A DNA stretch of 63,878 nt, counting the filler, from Octopus bimaculoides (lineage: Eukaryota): the NCBI RefSeq assembly GCF_001194135.2. It is 7 parts of 7 records of this genome, joined end to end, with 100 filler letters (N's around TTAATTAATTAA, not from the genome) between each part and the next. Parts side by side here need not be neighbours in the genome. Positions count along the whole stretch, not along the records: positions 44,986 to 50,928 come from NC_068995.1; 6 more parts are not named here. One strand, written 5' to 3'. Both the position numbers and the translations under genes were made by a program. The notes beneath the pieces were generated by a model. It did no database searches. It had not been told where the DNA came from and was given only the letters and a program-made list of their open reading frames with translations. This document shows, one piece after another, positions 44,986-53,935 of the stretch. The stretch's first letter is position 1. Each line of letters starts with the position of its first letter.

Positions 44986-45380
44986 GATGAGTTCTTCCCT
45001 TCCTTAAGTTCCCTCCAATGTTCGTTTGCCCGCTCCCCTATGCTCCTTGCTGTTTCGTCTACATATGTCGTTGTCTTATTTCTGCATCGTCCCTCTGTAC
45101 ATCTTATACTATAGACCACATTTCTGGTTTTGCAGTTCGTTTGTGGGCTAAATCTACATACGATACAGTTCCTATCAATGCAGGGGGTTCTACTGAAAGG
45201 GTATGTTCTACTGATAAGGGATTTAATAGGGTTGCCTGGCCTTTCAACAACCTTAATTCTTAGTTTAAGTTTGTCTAGGGCCCTTCTAAAGCGGTACGCC
45301 AGTTCGCCTCTAGGGGTGGTGTCGACGAACATGACGCTCTGGTACTTGAGGCTATCGTACCATGAGCTTACCTTCCCTAT
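44986..45380 (-). mobile_element. Penelope-like element GIY-YIG endonuclease fragment with Cys-rich linker
   Basis: PCIDRNCIVC...NCKTRNVVYSIRC...YVDETARSIGERANEH (VVY / YxGET / R / H pattern). The Cys-rich RT-EN linker is as described for Neptune-type PLEs. Truncated by an N gap. Confidence 0.85.
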
Positions 45381-47115
45381 TATTTAAACCAATAATAATA
45401 TGAACATAGTATAATACAATACATAGATAAACAAATGGAATTAAATACTACATACGTTAACAAAATTTAATTAAACACAAAAAACACACACACACACACA
45501 CATATGAACAAATAAATAAATAAAAACAAATACAAACGAACACGTATTAACAGAGTATATAGGTGATACAGACACTCTCCATACACACATGCACTTACAA
45601 AAGACACAGACACATTGAAAGACACGCATGCGTAGACACATACAATACGAATACAAAATACAAAATGGCTGATATTTAGCAAGGTGAGACCCACATAAGA
45701 AGGAAGGAAACANNNNNNNNNNNNNNNNNNNNNNNNNNNNNNNNNNNNNNNNNNNNNNNNNNNNNNNNNNNNNNNNNNNNNNNNNNNNNNNNNNNNNNNN
45801 NNNNNNNNNNNNNNNNNNNNNNNNNNNNNNNNNNNNNNNNNNNNNNNNNNNNNNNNNNNNNNNNNNNNNNNNNNNNNNNNNNNNNNNNNNNNNNNNNNNN
45901 NNNNNNNNNNNNNNNNNNNNNNNNNNNNNNNNNNNNNNNNNNNNNNNNNNNNNNNNNNNNNNNNNNNNNNNNNNNNNNNNNNNNNNNNNNNNNNNNNNNN
46001 NNNNNNNNNNNNNNNNNNNNNNNNNNNNNNNNNNNNNNNNNNNNNNNNNNNNNNNNNNNNNNNNNNNNNNNNNNNNNNATATATATATATATATATATAT
46101 ATAGTTAAGTATTTGCATAGATATACGTTGCCTGTGAAAATGCACGTACTCATGTTTGCGCTTGTGTTTTGAAGTTCGGAATCTAAAAAATATTTTGTTA
46201 TCTTTGTCTTGTAATGATATATTTAACCTTAGTTGTATAAATATATCGCTTCTATTTAGAAGTACACTACCCTTACTCTTTACTTTGTACATTTTGCAGA
46301 CTTACATTTAAGTTTTCATGTTACACCTCTTATTATATCGTGAATGCTATCGAATTTATTTCATAAAACCACGCTGCCTTGCTTTTATTTTCTCTAGTCT
46401 ATAAACATTTTCAAGCTATGTGTGTATATGTATTCGCATAAAAGAAATTTCTGCTCTGTATCGCGGTTTTTAATGTCTAATCATAGGATACACATTCTGT
46501 CTCCGTCTCTCAGTATGTCCATCTGTCTGTCAATCTGTCTGTTCCTCACCTCTCTCTCACTCACTCTGTATTTCAATCAGATTCTATAATCCCCCTCAGA
46601 CAAATAAATTCAAAACTACTGATGAGAAATCAAAACCAGATAGGCTGCCATTCTCCCATCTGTGAACATATTAGCATATTTATTGAGCGTAAACATACGT
46701 AATTATTTAGATATTATCTATGTATTCGTATAATTATATAAGTAACTTATACACATCGTTCATTGTATATATTCATAAACAGATAATTCATATTCTAAAA
46801 TAATAATCGTTATTTATGCTTTGTTTTCCCAATGATTAGATGATAAAGTTAATACATTAGTAACAATATACCATGTAACAGCTTAAGTGATTATTAATGC
46901 TAATATATTTGTGTTACATTTTCGAATCAGTATTAGCAGATTACCTCTCGGCTCCAAAATAAATGTTTTGAAATTTGTCTCTAGAGGCTCTCAAGAGCGG
47001 AGAACTGCATTTGGCTTTGTTTACTTCAATTAGTTGTTAATATTTCATTCCCTACTCTTATGAAACATAACAATTTCGTGTAATTTCATCAATAACCCTT
47101 CCTCACGTTCAATAT

Positions 47116-47306
47116 ATGAATGCACTCGACTGCACTGATTCACACATCAGTCTACGCACGCACACACTCGCATACAGACACACAAGCACACGCATATATG
47201 AATACATACATAAGTATATATGTGCATGTCAAACATTCGATACACACACACATATATGCTTATATGAGTGCATTCACATATGCATATGTCTATATATATA
47301 TATCTA

Positions 47307-47388
<82 letters not shown>

Positions 47389-47472
47389 CACACATATACA
47401 GATATAGATATAGATACACACACACATACACACACAATCCCAAACACACACACACACACATATATATATATA
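47116..47472. repeat. CA/TA microsatellite block upstream of the receptor gene
   Basis: Directly visible; near-pure (TA)n at about 47290-47385. Confidence 0.95.
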
Positions 47473-48144
47473 TGGTAAAGTATTACTGACGCAATTAAAA
47501 TTTTCTTTACATTATTAATGCTGTTATTGATATTTGTGTAATTTCATCCGGGGATTGTCGTCATTGTTTCTCCTGCAGCAACTGTTGTTTAAATATTCAT
47601 CTTTAGTGTTTCTCGGTTATAAATGCATTGAGTTTTATAGCACATGACTGCATTCCAAGCATTGACATTTTGCATGATTTTAGCCACCGAATCACCGATC
47701 TGATCTAGCTAGATGTGTTATCACATTATTTAGAATCATATGTTTGAAAGAATTCTCTTCTTGATTTTCACACGAAAACATCGTCCTACGGCTTCACGCG
47801 GATAAAGACAGCTAGAAGACCAAAACAATAATTATAACATTCATTGAAATATCTAATGCGAAACCCAACCTGTTAACTGACAGCAATAAAACCTCAACCA
47901 ACATATTTTTGTGGAAGTTTTAAAATGTGACGTTGACAAATCGCTTGCGACTCTACATCTTGCAAATTCCTCATCATACACAGAACTCAAATATATAATG
48001 ACAAAGTGGACAGCACAAAACTTTTCGTGAAGGTATTAGAATTTTCATATTTTTCAGTAAAATTGGCATTCTGTGAAGTTTATTAATTTGTATTTTATAT
48101 GCAGATTTTGGCTTTTTCTCTATCGTATGATAAAAGTCTAATAT

Positions 48145-48250
48145 GTAAGTTAGCAATCTATCCTGGCAATATTTTCTTTTATCGACTTCTATTACTAAAA
48201 ATTAACGAGGAAGTAATAAAACACCGACCAAATGAAATTTTACTTTTTAG
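48145..48250 (+). other. Putative 106-nt 5'-UTR intron of the receptor gene
   Basis: GTAAGT donor consensus at 48145-48150; T-rich acceptor TTTTACTTTTTAG ending at 48250; CTAAA/TTAAC branch-like motifs at about 48195-48205. Splicing would remove ATG 48232 and leave ATG 48265 as the first ATG. Confidence 0.4.
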
Positions 48251-49464
48251 AAGTAATCTACACAATGATATTTGTGATATATCTTGTTTTTATTCTGATT
48301 TCGAGTATACCGATAGTAAAGTCTACCCCTACGTATGGCGATGAAAGGCTATTAAGAGAAAAATTGTTAACTAATTATAGTAAAAGTATAAGACCAGTTA
48401 TTAATTTGACCAAAGTAGTTGATGTAACTGCTTTACTGTACCTTCAAACACTTTATGATTTGGACTTTGTAAATAACTTTATAATGGCACGCTACTATTT
48501 GGGATTAATATGGATCGATGAAAAGTTGACTTGGAATCCGTTGGACTATAACAATATTACGAGTATATATCTACCCAAAGATAAGATATGGACGCCACCT
48601 ATTAAAATGTGCAATTCAATGGACAAATCAGAAGAAAACGATGGTGTAGGTGAATTAATGCTTACTTATACGGGTTGGATTAACATGTGGTCATTCAGAT
48701 TACTGCACACTTATTGTCAAATCAACGCTTACACCTATCCATTTGATGAACATACGTGCGAAATTTATCTGTGTGTCGCTTTGCATACTATTAACCATAC
48801 CAGAATAAAGGAACTCATATACGAAGATTCAAAGTTTACACAAAACTATAAGTGGGATATAAATGTCTCTGGTAAAGTGAATGGTACTGACGAATTATTC
48901 AGTTACGCATTTGCACCGATGTACTTACGACGTAAACTTACCGTAGGAATCATAGCTATGCTTATTCCAACAGTAATGATGACTATTTTAACTATTTTTG
49001 TTTTCCTTCTACCTCCTGAATCGGGGGAAAAAGTTTCTCTGGCGACTACAATATTTTTATCAAACGTCTTGTACCTTGTCCAGATCGATAAAACTACTCC
49101 AACAAATACAAAATATCCTTCACTTCTAATGTTATATTTAATGTTATTGTCAATGTTAAGTGGAATCGCTACACTTGGTTCTGTGGTTATAAGTAAGTTG
49201 TATGTAATTCAGTCACCTTCCTTGAGAAAATCGAACCCGTCAGATCAAAATATGAATAAATCTCATACTAATAAAGTTGCAGATATTTCAACAATTTCCA
49301 AGGTACAATCAGATTTGCCGATTAGAGAGAAGCCAAACGAGAAACGAATATATTGCATATCCGACTATATACGGCTCGATGACATATTTCTAAAATTAAG
49401 CATTGCTACATCTGTAATAATCTCAATGATATTTACATGTTTGTTGTTTATTCCACTTGAATAA
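48232..49464 (+). CDS. CRT1: Intronless divergent Cys-loop pentameric ligand-gated ion channel subunit; cephalopod chemotactile receptor (CRT1-like). Likely true start is Met12 at 48265
   Basis: 410-aa uninterrupted ORF. It has a signal peptide (MIFVIYLVFILISSIPIVKS|TPT), an N-terminal helix plus IRPV motif, W-x-D-x-x-L-x-W and WTPP. The Cys-loop is C162-x13-C176 (CQINAYTYPFDEHTC) with YPFD, followed by four hydrophobic helices with PPESGEK before M2. Loop-C vicinal Cys-Cys is absent. Six extracellular N-glycosylation sequons (N48, N58, N108, N188, N211, N217). The CRT1 name comes from recall of the published O. bimaculoides protein and should be confirmed by BLAST. Confidence 0.9.
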   Translation: MKFYFLEVIYTMIFVIYLVFILISSIPIVKSTPTYGDERLLREKLLTNYSKSIRPVINLTKVVDVTALLYLQTLYDLDFVNNFIMARYYLGLIWIDEKLTWNPLDYNNITSIYLPKDKIWTPPIKMCNSMDKSEENDGVGELMLTYTGWINMWSFRLLHTYCQINAYTYPFDEHTCEIYLCVALHTINHTRIKELIYEDSKFTQNYKWDINVSGKVNGTDELFSYAFAPMYLRRKLTVGIIAMLIPTVMMTILTIFVFLLPPESGEKVSLATTIFLSNVLYLVQIDKTTPTNTKYPSLLMLYLMLLSMLSGIATLGSVVISKLYVIQSPSLRKSNPSDQNMNKSHTNKVADISTISKVQSDLPIREKPNEKRIYCISDYIRLDDIFLKLSIATSVIISMIFTCLLFIPLE

Positions 49465-49670
49465 AAATATGAATGTGAAATTACACGACAGTTTACTAAA
49501 ATCGCTGTGAATTTGAATGTGCTTAGCAGAAAGGAAAAGAAATTTGCGATATGGAAGATCAAACATTATTTATTACTTGTATTTTTTGTCTTCTACTTTA
49601 GTATTGATACATGTTCATTGAAAGATATATGTGAAAAAATAAAAACACAAGTTCAACTGAATCCCTATAT

Positions 49671-49803
<133 letters not shown>

Positions 49804-50488
49804 AGCAATGTTAAATCTCTGAACGAGGTATTAACAGTAACTGCACGACAAGGTGAAGTATATTTGCCACTTAAATGTGGCTGAACCCTAAGGGTGGATG
49901 TTACTGTTGCTGTTATATATANNNNNNNNNNNNNNNNNNNNNNNNNNNNNNNNNNNNNNNNNNNNNNNNNNNNNNNNNNNNNNNNNNNNNNNNNNNNNNN
50001 NNNNNNNNNNNNNNNNNNNNNNNNNNNNNNNNNNNNNNNNNNNNNNNNNNNNNNNNNNNNNNNNNNNNNNNNNNNNNNNNNNNNNNNNNNNNNNNNNNNN
50101 NNNNNNNNNNNNNNNNNNNNNNNNNNNNNNNNNNNNNNNNNNNNNNNNNNNNNNNNTGTATATGTGTACAAATCTACGTATATGTAAGCATGTATAATTG
50201 TGTATGTATTTGTATAAAACCATATATATATATATATACATATATATATGTGTATGTGTATACACTCAGACATGTATATGTATATGTGTGTGTGTGTGTC
50301 CGTGTGTGCGTGTGTATAGATATATAAACAGGAGTAGCCCAGCTATTTCTCCGCTGATTGAAAAATATAGAACAACCTTAATCGATTTTCGAAATATATT
50401 AGCTTCTCATCAAAGGTGTCTACATGAATTTGATGAATCCCAGAGAAGCAACTTGCCAACCTGTTTATATACTCAACAATTATAGAGT

Positions 50489-50819
50489 GTCTTTTGCCGA
50501 ACTGCTAGGTTACAGGGATGTAAATACACCAACATCGGTTTCCAGGTGACGTAGGGTGAGAAATACAGACACGCAAACACACACACACACACACACACAT
50601 ACACACACACACAGAGGCACACATACGCACACACACACACATATATATGTATATACCACGGGCTTTTGTCATTTTCCGTCTATCAAATCCATTCCCAAGG
50701 CTATGGTCCGCCCGAGGCGAAAGCAGAGGACACATGGCCAAGTTGCCACGCAGTGGAACTGAACCCGAAAATCATATGGTTGGGGAGCAAGCTACTTACC
50801 ACCCAGCCACTCCTGCGCC

Positions 50820-50820
<1 letters not shown>
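50489..50820 (-). mobile_element. CORE-like SINE copy with internal microsatellite
   Basis: Reverse complement of the 3404-3700 SINE (AGCTACTTACCAC, TTCCGTCTATCAAATCC, TCTTTTGCCGAAC). Confidence 0.85.
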
Positions 50821-50867
<47 letters not shown>

Positions 50868-51028
50868 TAGATAGATAGATATATATATATAGATACTTAA
50901 GTATGTAAGCATGTTAATATCACATTACNNNNNNNNNNNNNNNNNNNNNNNNNNNNNNNNNNNNNNNNNNNNTTAATTAATTAANNNNNNNNNNNNNNNN
51001 NNNNNNNNNNNNNNNNNNNNNNNNNNNN

Positions 51029-53212: not shown

Positions 53213-53935
53213 ATTATTGAGTGAGAGAGCAGCTATCGAAATATCACTAGGGCACAAGCTGAAGTCTAATATACCCATCGTGACTACACGTTTGATAAGG
53301 GTACACCAAGCACATGCATCGCAATGATATGTATGCGATATGGAGATCTCATATCAAGATAAACCGTGTATGACCTTGCAGGCAGGGCCCAATTAGAATT
53401 TTCTTCAGGTCAAGTATTCCAGCCTATTTAAAAGGACCCTATTTCTCATGTCTCCAGGGGTGAATTATTCAAACCTCAAAGAATCTCTGTCAACACATGG
53501 CTATGATGCTCCCCCACTACTACTTGTAACTAGTGTTGCACATATCAGCAGCCATGAATATGCTCAGTTGGTTTTGGTCAAGCAATTCTGCAATATTGAG
53601 TAAAAAATTTGTTATAGCCGATCTTTTACACCAAGACAAAACATGTACAAGGGGGTTCCAACAAGTTTCTGGTTTTGAGTAAAAGAAAATACATGAGGAA
53701 CAATTAATTATGATTTTACTCAACATATTCCCCTCTCAGATTCACACACTTAGTGCAGTGGTCCTTCAGGTTTTTTTAAGCCCTGTAAAAGAACTTGGAA
53801 GCTGGGTCTGCAACAAGGCCTTTCATGATACCCTTAAAGCCAGGAATTTTTCAGCCTCTCCTCATACATGCTAACATTTCCAATCAGTTAAGGTCACAAG
53901 CCATGAGAACCACTGCCTGGTATTGTGTGAGGACA
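53213..53935 (-). mobile_element. Unclassified interspersed repeat (copy 2) interrupted by a mariner MITE
   Basis: Homologous to 31140-31600, with a 217-bp insertion at 53648-53864. Confidence 0.75.
53648..53864 (-). mobile_element. Mariner-derived MITE (same family as 1533-1745)
   Basis: Reverse-complement homology (CTCAACATATTCCCCTCTCAGATTCACACA; TAAAGCCAGGAATTTTTCAGC); TA at 53646-47 and 53865-66. Confidence 0.85.

What the first reader, a model, noticed from the sequence alone, without database searches (positions are those of the whole stretch)
48232..49464. Octopus chemotactile ('taste-by-touch') receptor: an nAChR-derived channel repurposed for sensing
Seen: an intact single-exon Cys-loop receptor with no acetylcholine-binding signature, the only real gene in 64 kb. 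Established: octopus suckers express an expanded family of atypical nAChR-like genes that act as contact chemoreceptors for poorly soluble compounds such as terpenoids. Inference: this ORF belongs to that family and matches my recollection of CRT1. It is the standout biological system here. An automated annotator would call it a generic acetylcholine receptor subunit, but it is a published system and not a new one.
Basis: partly seen in the sequence, partly recalled or inferred. Interest (0 to 1): 0.9.

Follow-up and report, generated by a model that had tools for sequence, protein, structure and literature searches.

The report
Octopus taste-by-touch receptor gene CRT1

Summary
The 410-codon ORF at 48232..49464 (+) is real and far beyond chance: about 6e-14 for an open frame this long, and shuffled sequence never exceeded 149 codons. 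It has the two Pfam domains of a Cys-loop ligand-gated channel. Residues 12-410 are 100% identical to PDB chains deposited as 'Chemotactile receptor CRT1' (9e6b and others). Residues 32-410 are identical to 8eis ('Octopus sensory receptor'). All 16 residues cited in CRT1 binding and mutagenesis work match at one fixed offset. The piece is base-for-base identical to chromosome record CM046615.1 of assembly GCA_001194135.2, and UniRef names the protein CRT1 of Octopus bimaculoides. Aligned to human nAChR alpha-6, the ACh-binding signature is missing: loop A Tyr->Cys127, loop B Trp->His185, loop C Tyr-x-Cys-Cys->Val-Asn-Gly-Thr and loop D Trp->Tyr89. The Cys-loop, the M2 -1' Glu and the 9' Leu are kept. 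A 60%-identical paralogue with an uninterrupted coding sequence lies 3.9 kb downstream. An older automated model does call this gene 'acetylcholine receptor subunit alpha-like'. Three small corrections apply. The published protein starts at the second ATG (48265). 'Single-exon' is shown only for the coding sequence. Later work adds microbial metabolites and progesterone to the terpenoid ligands. Novelty: already known. Interest is low.

The parts
48232..49464 (+). Complete open reading frame, 410 codons plus TAA, from the first ATG after the in-frame stop at 48217
   Evidence: A gene call with exactly this 410-aa product is on record for the chromosome.
48265..49464 (+). CRT1 coding sequence as published (start at Met12, 399 aa). 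This ATG has A at -3, and the paralogue's start aligns within one residue of it.
   Evidence: The PDB 9e6b chain and the UniRef CRT1 construct begin MIFVIYLV.... The paralogue alignment pairs CRT1 residue 13 with paralogue residue 3.
48265..48324 (+). Signal peptide (residues 12-31, or 1-31 if the first ATG is used). The mature chain starts at Thr32 (TPTYGDE...).
   Evidence: The deposited 8eis chain starts at residue 32. A hydrophobic stretch covers residues 1-33. Published residue numbering fits only an offset of 31.
48325..48933 (+). Extracellular ligand-binding domain (ORF residues 32-234). It holds the hydrophobic orthosteric pocket residues Y89, W153, F155, L184, S200, L222 and F223 (published numbering Y58, W122, F124, L153, S169, L191, F192) and the vestibule residue E135 (E104).
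   Evidence: Pfam Neur_chan_LBD covers residues 41-191.
48715..48759 (+). Cys-loop, C162-QINAYTYPFDEHT-C176, with the YPFD motif kept
   Evidence: It aligns to the alpha-6 Cys-loop without gaps.
48874..48903 (+). Loop C remnant KVNGTDELFS. The Tyr-x-Cys-Cys of nAChR alpha subunits is replaced by Val216-Asn-Gly218-Thr219. E221, L222 and F223 are published ligand-contact or mutagenesis sites.
   Evidence: Alignment to human alpha-6; coordinates; residues.
48934..49209 (+). Transmembrane helices M1-M3 (ORF residues about 235-326)
   Evidence: Pfam Neur_chan_memb covers residues 243-348. Hydropathy runs cover 235-263 and 295-326.
49024..49092 (+). M2 pore-lining helix GEKVSLATTIFLSNVLYLVQIDK. The -1' Glu266 and 9' Leu276 are conserved. 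The 20' position is Lys287, with Asp286 at 19'.
   Evidence: Gapless alignment to alpha-6 M2; coordinates.
49210..49374 (+). Short M3-M4 intracellular loop (residues about 327-381)
   Evidence: Lies between the hydropathy runs. Its similarity to nAChRs is low.
49375..49461 (+). M4 helix and C-terminus (residues about 382-410)
   Evidence: Hydropathy run 382-410. Present in the solved CRT1 chains.
49303..49308 (+). Splice-donor-like GTACAA just after codon K357. An older automated gene model used it to skip M4.
48043..48057 (+). Splice-acceptor-like site TTTCATATTTTTCAG, 174 nt upstream of the first ATG. It may be the start of the coding exon. This is inference only.
   Evidence: The paralogue has a comparable acceptor 145 nt upstream of its ATG.
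49638..49643 (+). AATAAA polyadenylation-signal-like hexamer, 174 nt after the stop. Inference only.

Best explanation
This is the Octopus bimaculoides gene for chemotactile receptor CRT1 ('chemotactile receptor for terpenes 1'). It encodes a subunit of a pentameric Cys-loop cation channel that descends from nicotinic acetylcholine receptors. Shown here: the identity, the domain layout, the loss of the ACh-binding residues, the retained cation-channel pore motifs, the uninterrupted coding sequence and the tandem paralogue. Taken from the literature: five subunits form a homomeric channel. Poorly soluble hydrophobic molecules bind in a greasy orthosteric pocket at the subunit interface under loop C, formed by Y58, W122, F124, L153, L191 and F192 in mature numbering. 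These ligands are terpenoids, diosgenin-like steroids, bacterial beta-carbolines, lumichrome and progesterone. Binding opens the pore, and cations including much Ca2+ (tuned by the E104 vestibule ring) enter sensory cells of the sucker epithelium. Ligand application evokes axial nerve cord activity and arm movement. The receptor does not respond to acetylcholine. Depolarisation of the sensory cell as the step linking channel opening to nerve activity is my inference.
For: Identity: residues 12-410 are 100% identical to 9e6b/9e6c/9e6d/9yi4 'Chemotactile receptor CRT1', and residues 32-410 to 8eis 'Octopus sensory receptor'. The protein shares a cluster with UniRef 'Chemotactile receptor CRT1, Octopus bimaculoides'. 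The piece has 0 mismatches to CM046615.1 of GCA_001194135.2. All 16 published residues match at offset 31, and the next best offset gives 5 of 16. Fold: Pfam LBD and TM domains, the Cys-loop and four hydrophobic segments. Loss of the ACh site and retention of the -1' Glu and 9' Leu come from the alpha-6 alignment. Closest non-self relatives are squid CRB1 (134 bits), then nAChR alpha-6 (114 bits). A tandem paralogue is 60% identical. Function from the literature: homomeric; activated by hydrophobic ligands, microbial H3C, norharmane and lumichrome; E104 tunes Ca2+ permeation; cryo-EM pocket residues. Progesterone has an EC50 of about 5.8 uM, and in situ signal is seen in the sensory epithelium of the arm suckers and the hectocotylus tip. 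No response to ACh; gated by terpenes; binds diosgenin. The family has up to 26 members in O. bimaculoides and diverged from nAChRs.
Against: Nothing in the sequence argues against it. Three caveats. All functional statements are taken from papers and were not tested here. The two founding papers and the companion paper are not held in the library, so I read them only through citing papers. The start codon (48232 or 48265), the transcript ends and any UTR intron are not established by the DNA alone.
Confidence: 0.97

Rival explanations
1. It is an ordinary neuronal or muscle nicotinic acetylcholine receptor subunit gated by ACh, as automated annotation names it.
For: Pfam domains and PDB hits to nAChR alpha and beta subunits and to 5-HT3A at 1e-25 to 1e-32. 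RefSeq names it 'acetylcholine receptor subunit alpha-like' and names the neighbour 'beta-type acr-2-like'.
Against: The vicinal Cys pair and the aromatic-box Tyr and Trp residues are replaced. The protein is identical to one reported not to respond to ACh. Its best non-self match is squid CRB1, not an nAChR.
Confidence: 0.01
2. The locus makes mainly a truncated, M4-less product, or a read-through transcript fused to the next gene, as in the older 361-aa model. On this reading the full-length ORF is not the main product.
For: XP_014786442.1 leaves the ORF at K357, at a canonical-looking AAG|GTACAA donor. It joins a CCTATTCAG| acceptor about 145 nt upstream of the paralogue's ATG.
Against: The cloned receptor that was expressed, recorded and solved includes M4 and equals the uninterrupted genomic ORF. 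A 410-aa gene call is on record for the newer assembly. A pentameric channel subunit without M4 would not be expected to fold (established knowledge of the family). The model was purely computational ('PREDICTED').
Confidence: 0.03
3. The terpenoid 'taste' role is secondary, and the main natural role of the receptor is sensing progesterone during mating and/or microbial metabolites on prey and eggs. This refines the reader's account and does not contradict it.
For: Progesterone is reported as the highest-affinity natural ligand, and CRT1 is expressed in the hectocotylus tip. Bacterial H3C, norharmane and lumichrome activate CRT1 and drive arm behaviour.
Against: Both sources were read here as preprints. 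The receptor is also expressed in ordinary arm suckers and responds to terpenoids and diosgenin, so the roles coexist.
Confidence: 0.5

Closest known systems
Octopus bimaculoides chemotactile receptor CRT1 (PDB 8EIS, 9E6B, 9E6C, 9E6D, 9YI4). From my own recollection, not checked here, this is the CR518 of van Giesen et al. 2020.
   Same: Everything: 100% amino-acid identity over the whole published protein, same species and the same chromosome record.
   Different: Nothing in the mature protein. The genomic ORF offers an extra upstream in-frame ATG (11 more codons) that the published construct does not use.
Tandem paralogue XP_052829363.1, 3.9 kb downstream (L001 15164-16366)
   Same: Same strand, uninterrupted coding sequence, 400 aa, same two Pfam domains, 60% amino-acid and 73% nucleotide identity, and loop C also lacks the Cys pair.
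   Different: Different residues at the ligand-pocket positions. No flanking DNA similarity. Which named CR it is was not determined.
Squid chemotactile receptor CRB1 (PDB 8EIZ)
   Same: Best non-self match (134 bits, E 6e-38). Same family of nAChR-derived sensory channels. Cys-loop and GEKV M2 motif conserved.
   Different: Similarity is distant: 134 bits against 882 for the identical CRT1 chain. It is reported to respond to bitter tastants such as denatonium rather than terpenes.
Canonical nicotinic acetylcholine receptor subunits (e.g. human alpha-6, Torpedo alpha) and 5-HT3A
   Same: Pentameric Cys-loop fold, Cys-loop, four TM helices, and a cation-type M2 with -1' Glu and 9' Leu.
   Different: Loop A Tyr->Cys, loop B Trp->His, loop C Tyr-x-Cys-Cys->Val-Asn-Gly-Thr and loop D Trp->Tyr. 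Short M3-M4 loop. Not gated by ACh. Sensory rather than synaptic role.
Alpo4, an orphan nAChR-like Cys-loop receptor of the annelid Alvinella pompejana
   Same: A lophotrochozoan nAChR-like channel that lacks the ligand signature motifs and binds a sterol derivative at the orthosteric site.
   Different: Its agonist is unknown and its sterol binding mode differs from CRT1's. It was not compared by sequence here.

Membership tests
Cys-loop pentameric ligand-gated ion channels | N-terminal ligand-binding domain followed by the channel transmembrane domain | tested here: met
   Pfam PF02931 at 109.6 bits (cut-off 26) and PF02932 at 46.7 bits (cut-off 28.1).
Cys-loop pentameric ligand-gated ion channels | Two Cys separated by 13 residues (the Cys-loop) with the aromatic-Pro-aromatic-Asp (F/Y-P-F-D) core | tested here: met
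   C162-QINAYTYPFDEHT-C176, aligned to the alpha-6 Cys-loop.
Cys-loop pentameric ligand-gated ion channels | Four transmembrane helices, with an M2 of cation-selective type (-1' Glu, 9' Leu) | tested here: met
   Hydropathy runs. Gapless M2 alignment with E266 and L276 conserved.
Canonical nAChR alpha subunit | Vicinal Cys-Cys at the tip of loop C | tested here: not met
   Gly218-Thr219 align to the alpha-6 CC. There are no adjacent Cys anywhere in the protein.
Canonical nAChR alpha subunit | Aromatic box for the quaternary ammonium: loop A Tyr, loop B Trp, two loop C Tyr, loop D Trp | tested here: not met
   Cys127, His185 (no Trp between residues 154 and 207), Val216, Phe223 and Tyr89 at the aligned positions. 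The alignment has a 2-residue gap next to loop B, so that assignment is good to about 2 residues.
Canonical nAChR alpha subunit | Gating by acetylcholine | not testable with these tools
   The literature reports no response to ACh.
Cephalopod chemotactile receptors (CRs), specifically CRT1 | Sequence identity with the characterised protein | tested here: met
   100% over 399 of 399 residues to 9e6b and 379 of 379 to 8eis. Same cluster as UniRef CRT1.
Cephalopod chemotactile receptors (CRs), specifically CRT1 | Hydrophobic orthosteric pocket residues (Y58, W122, F124, L153, L191, F192), H-bond donor S169 and vestibule E104 | tested here: met
   All are present at offset +31, with 16 of 16 cited residues matching.
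Cephalopod chemotactile receptors (CRs), specifically CRT1 | Species and genomic setting: O. bimaculoides, member of an expanded family with neighbouring paralogues | tested here: met
   Chromosome CM046615.1 of GCA_001194135.2, with a paralogue 3.9 kb downstream. The family size of up to 26 comes from the literature.
Cephalopod chemotactile receptors (CRs), specifically CRT1 | Expression in sucker sensory epithelium | not testable with these tools
   Published in situ hybridisation shows CRT1 in the sensory epithelium of arm suckers and the hectocotylus tip.
Cephalopod chemotactile receptors (CRs), specifically CRT1 | Activation by poorly soluble hydrophobic ligands | not testable with these tools
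   Published recordings and cryo-EM with terpenes, diosgenin, norharmane, H3C, lumichrome and progesterone.
Cephalopod chemotactile receptors (CRs), specifically CRT1 | Phylogenetic placement in the CR clade, apart from canonical nAChRs | not tested
   No tree was built, because the protein is itself the structural type member. Indirect support: its best non-self matches are a tandem CR-like paralogue (60%) and squid CRB1, ahead of any nAChR.

The most novel reading that the evidence does not exclude
The donor-like site inside CRT1 (49303) and the acceptor just upstream of the next paralogue might be joined in real transcripts. Tandem CR genes would then be co-transcribed, or would yield M4-less or chimeric isoforms. 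That could couple expression of neighbouring CRs and so influence which heteromers a sensory cell makes. The only evidence is one superseded computational gene model.
Probability: 0.07. Interest if true: 0.35.

Novelty: already known. Interest (0 to 1): 0.08.

Why it matters
CRT1 is a well-documented case of a neurotransmitter receptor turned into an environmental chemosensor. It links atomic structure, positive selection in the binding pocket, microbial and hormonal cues, and behaviour. That story is already published, with five solved-structure entries of this exact protein. Finding the gene again in the reference genome adds nothing new. It does show that the first-stage reader can recognise such a gene from raw sequence, and that generic annotation ('acetylcholine receptor subunit alpha-like') hides it.

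Tried and rejected
1. The founding papers (van Giesen 2020, Allard 2023, Kang 2023 and the 2023 primer) are not held. I took their content only through citing papers.
2. The truncated minus-strand ORF at the left edge of the piece gave no Pfam hit even at E 10 and only chance-level PDB hits.
3. Rfam and tRNA scans of the piece found nothing.
4. I looked for shared non-coding DNA between CRT1 and its tandem paralogue. Similarity stops at the coding sequence, and the 300-nt upstream regions align no better than shuffles, z = -1.4.
5. tblastn of CRT1 against the 21-kb locus found no further copies or fragments beyond the one paralogue.
6. I deliberately did not run the large homologue searches, structure prediction or fold search. 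An identical protein is already solved and characterised, so their results could not change the verdict.
7. The canonical nAChR reading was considered and rejected on the residue test.

Full report
**Observation**

The piece (44986-50928) holds one long open reading frame, 48232..49464 on the + strand, of 410 codons plus TAA. The piece is AT-rich (33% G+C over non-N bases), so stop codons are frequent. The per-codon stop probability is 0.071, and 410 open codons have a probability of about 6e-14. Two hundred shuffles gave longest open stretches with a mean of 93 and a maximum of 149 codons, against 414 observed. The next longest real stretch is 139 codons. The ORF is therefore real.

Pfam finds the ligand-binding domain (PF02931, 2e-31, residues 41-191) and the transmembrane region (PF02932, 6e-12, residues 243-348) of neurotransmitter-gated channels. 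Both score far above their curated cut-offs.

**Identity**

A sequence search of all PDB chains gives 100% identity over residues 12-410 to 9e6b_A, 'Chemotactile receptor CRT1' (the same sequence is in 9e6c, 9e6d and 9yi4). Residues 32-410 are 100% identical to 8eis_A, 'Octopus sensory receptor'. The next hits are far weaker:
- squid CRB1 (8eiz), 134 bits
- human nAChR alpha-6, 114 bits
- Torpedo alpha and 5-HT3A, about 108-113 bits

An exact look-up places the ORF in a cluster with the UniRef entry 'Chemotactile receptor CRT1, Octopus bimaculoides, TaxID 37653'. That entry is the M12-start protein plus a Ser linker and Strep tag, matching the expression construct described in the preprint.

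The ORF is encoded on one contig on record, chromosome CM046615.1 of GCA_001194135.2 at about 38.0 Mb. The whole piece matches that record with 0 mismatches and is bounded on both sides by assembly gaps.

As an independent check, I took 16 residues named in the CRT1 structural and mutagenesis work (Y58, W122, F124, F192, E104, S169, L153, L191, Y39, A152, C150, D168, E167, E190, L37, V151). All 16 match the window protein at an offset of +31, which is mature-chain numbering from Thr32. The best alternative offset matches 5 of 16.

**Anatomy**

- Signal peptide runs to residue 31.
- The extracellular domain covers residues 32-234 and contains the Cys-loop C162-QINAYTYPFDEHT-C176.
- M1-M3 cover about residues 235-326.
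- A short M3-M4 loop follows, then M4 at about 382-410.

In the HMMER alignment to human alpha-6 the ACh-binding positions are replaced:

| Position | nAChR residue | CRT1 residue |
|---|---|---|
| Loop A | Tyr | Cys127 |
| Loop B | Trp | His185 |
| Loop C | Tyr-x-Cys-Cys | Val216-Asn-Gly218-Thr219 |
| Loop C, second Tyr | Tyr | Phe223 |
| Loop D | Trp | Tyr89 |

There is no Trp between residues 154 and 207, so the loss of the loop B Trp holds whatever the local gap placement. M2 aligns without gaps and keeps the GEK motif (-1' Glu266) and the 9' Leu276. In established nAChR and 5-HT3 knowledge these mark a cation-selective, Leu-gated pore. The 20' Glu is replaced by Lys287, with Asp286 next to it.

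**Mechanism**

The mechanism below comes from the literature. It applies directly because the protein is identical.
- CRs diverged from nAChRs and form homo- and heteropentameric non-selective cation channels. [quoted passage not shown] O. bimaculoides has up to 26 CRs.
- CRT1 works as a homomer. It binds synthetic hydrophobic agonists and the bacterial metabolites H3C, norharmane and lumichrome in a flexible hydrophobic orthosteric pocket (Y58, W122, F124, F192, with S169 as an H-bond donor).
- Its E104 ring tunes Ca2+ permeation.
- The ligands drive axial-nerve activity and arm movement.
- CRT1 ('chemotactile receptor for terpenes 1') is also a progesterone receptor with an EC50 of about 5.8 uM. 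In situ hybridisation finds it in the sensory epithelium of arm suckers and the hectocotylus tip.
- It does not respond to ACh, is gated by terpenes and binds diosgenin.

The founding papers themselves are not held.

**Surroundings**

A second Cys-loop gene lies 3.9 kb downstream on the same strand, outside the piece at L001 15164-16366. It is 400 aa, has an uninterrupted coding sequence, and is 60% identical to CRT1 in protein and 73% in DNA. RefSeq names it 'acetylcholine receptor subunit beta-type acr-2-like'. Similarity between the two copies stops at the coding sequence, and the upstream 300 nt align no better than shuffles. No other copy or fragment exists in the 21-kb locus. The piece has no Rfam or tRNA hits. 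It contains several dinucleotide microsatellites and two internal N gaps.

1. The published protein begins at the second in-frame ATG (48265). That ATG has A at -3, while the first has C at -3, and it lines up with the paralogue's start. The mature protein is unaffected.
2. 'Single-exon' is shown only for the coding sequence. An acceptor-like site 174 nt upstream (48043-48057) resembles the acceptor 145 nt upstream of the paralogue's ATG, so a 5'-UTR intron is possible.
3. The ligand list has grown beyond terpenoids.

**Noted oddity**

The older automated model XP_014786442.1 ('acetylcholine receptor subunit alpha-like', 361 aa) leaves the ORF after K357, at AAG|GTACAA (49302|49303). It joins an acceptor just upstream of the paralogue, adding 15 residues and dropping M4. 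This is most likely a mis-model. A real read-through isoform is possible but unsupported.

**Verdict**

This is the reference-genome copy of a published, structurally solved receptor, so it is already known. It has low interest for discovery, although the biology itself is remarkable.

Noticed in passing
window 44986-45332 (-), cut by the left edge of the piece (an assembly gap): A 115-residue open stretch (MFVDTTPRGELAYRF...NVVYSIRC...TYVDETARSIGERANEHWRE) runs into the gap. By eye, and from memory only, the VVY...Y-x-x-ET...R...EH pattern preceded by a C-x2-C resembles the GIY-YIG endonuclease module of Penelope-like retroelements. Pfam gave no hit even at E 10, and PDB gave only chance-level hits.
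   Followed up: partly
window 49302|49303 and L001 15010-15063 (window-equivalent 53241-53294, outside the piece): The older RefSeq model XP_014786442.1 splices from a donor-like AAG|GTACAA inside CRT1 to a CCTATTCAG| acceptor about 145 nt upstream of the next paralogue's ATG. This gives a 361-aa product without M4. It is either a mis-model or a read-through transcript between tandem CR genes.
   Followed up: partly
L001 15164-16366 (+), 3.9 kb downstream of CRT1 and beyond the piece: Tandem paralogue with an uninterrupted coding sequence, 400 aa, 60% identical to CRT1, named 'acetylcholine receptor subunit beta-type acr-2-like' (XP_052829363.1). Similarity to CRT1 is confined to the coding sequence. 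I did not determine which named CR it is.
   Followed up: partly
window 48232 versus 48265: There are two in-frame ATGs 11 codons apart. One gene call on record uses the first (410 aa). The published construct and the old RefSeq model use the second, which has the better -3 A context and matches the paralogue's start.
   Followed up: partly
window 47291-47460, 49671-49794, 50565-50641, 50820-50895, 46079-46103: Dinucleotide microsatellites, (TA)n, (AC)n and (TG)n, flank the gene on both sides. They account for most of the other 'ORFs' in the mechanical list, which read as YIYIYI or CVCVCV runs.
   Followed up: yes
window 45713-46078 and 49922-50156; piece edges: Two internal runs of N (366 and 235 bases) are present in the public chromosome record too. 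The piece itself is the stretch between two larger assembly gaps (L001 5521-6754 and 12698-13828), so intergenic distances here are estimates.
   Followed up: yes
window 47992-47998, 48043-48057, 49638-49643: A TATA-like TATATAA lies 240 nt upstream of the first ATG, a strong acceptor-like site 174 nt upstream, and an AATAAA 174 nt after the stop. These are candidate transcript landmarks with no RNA evidence.
   Followed up: no
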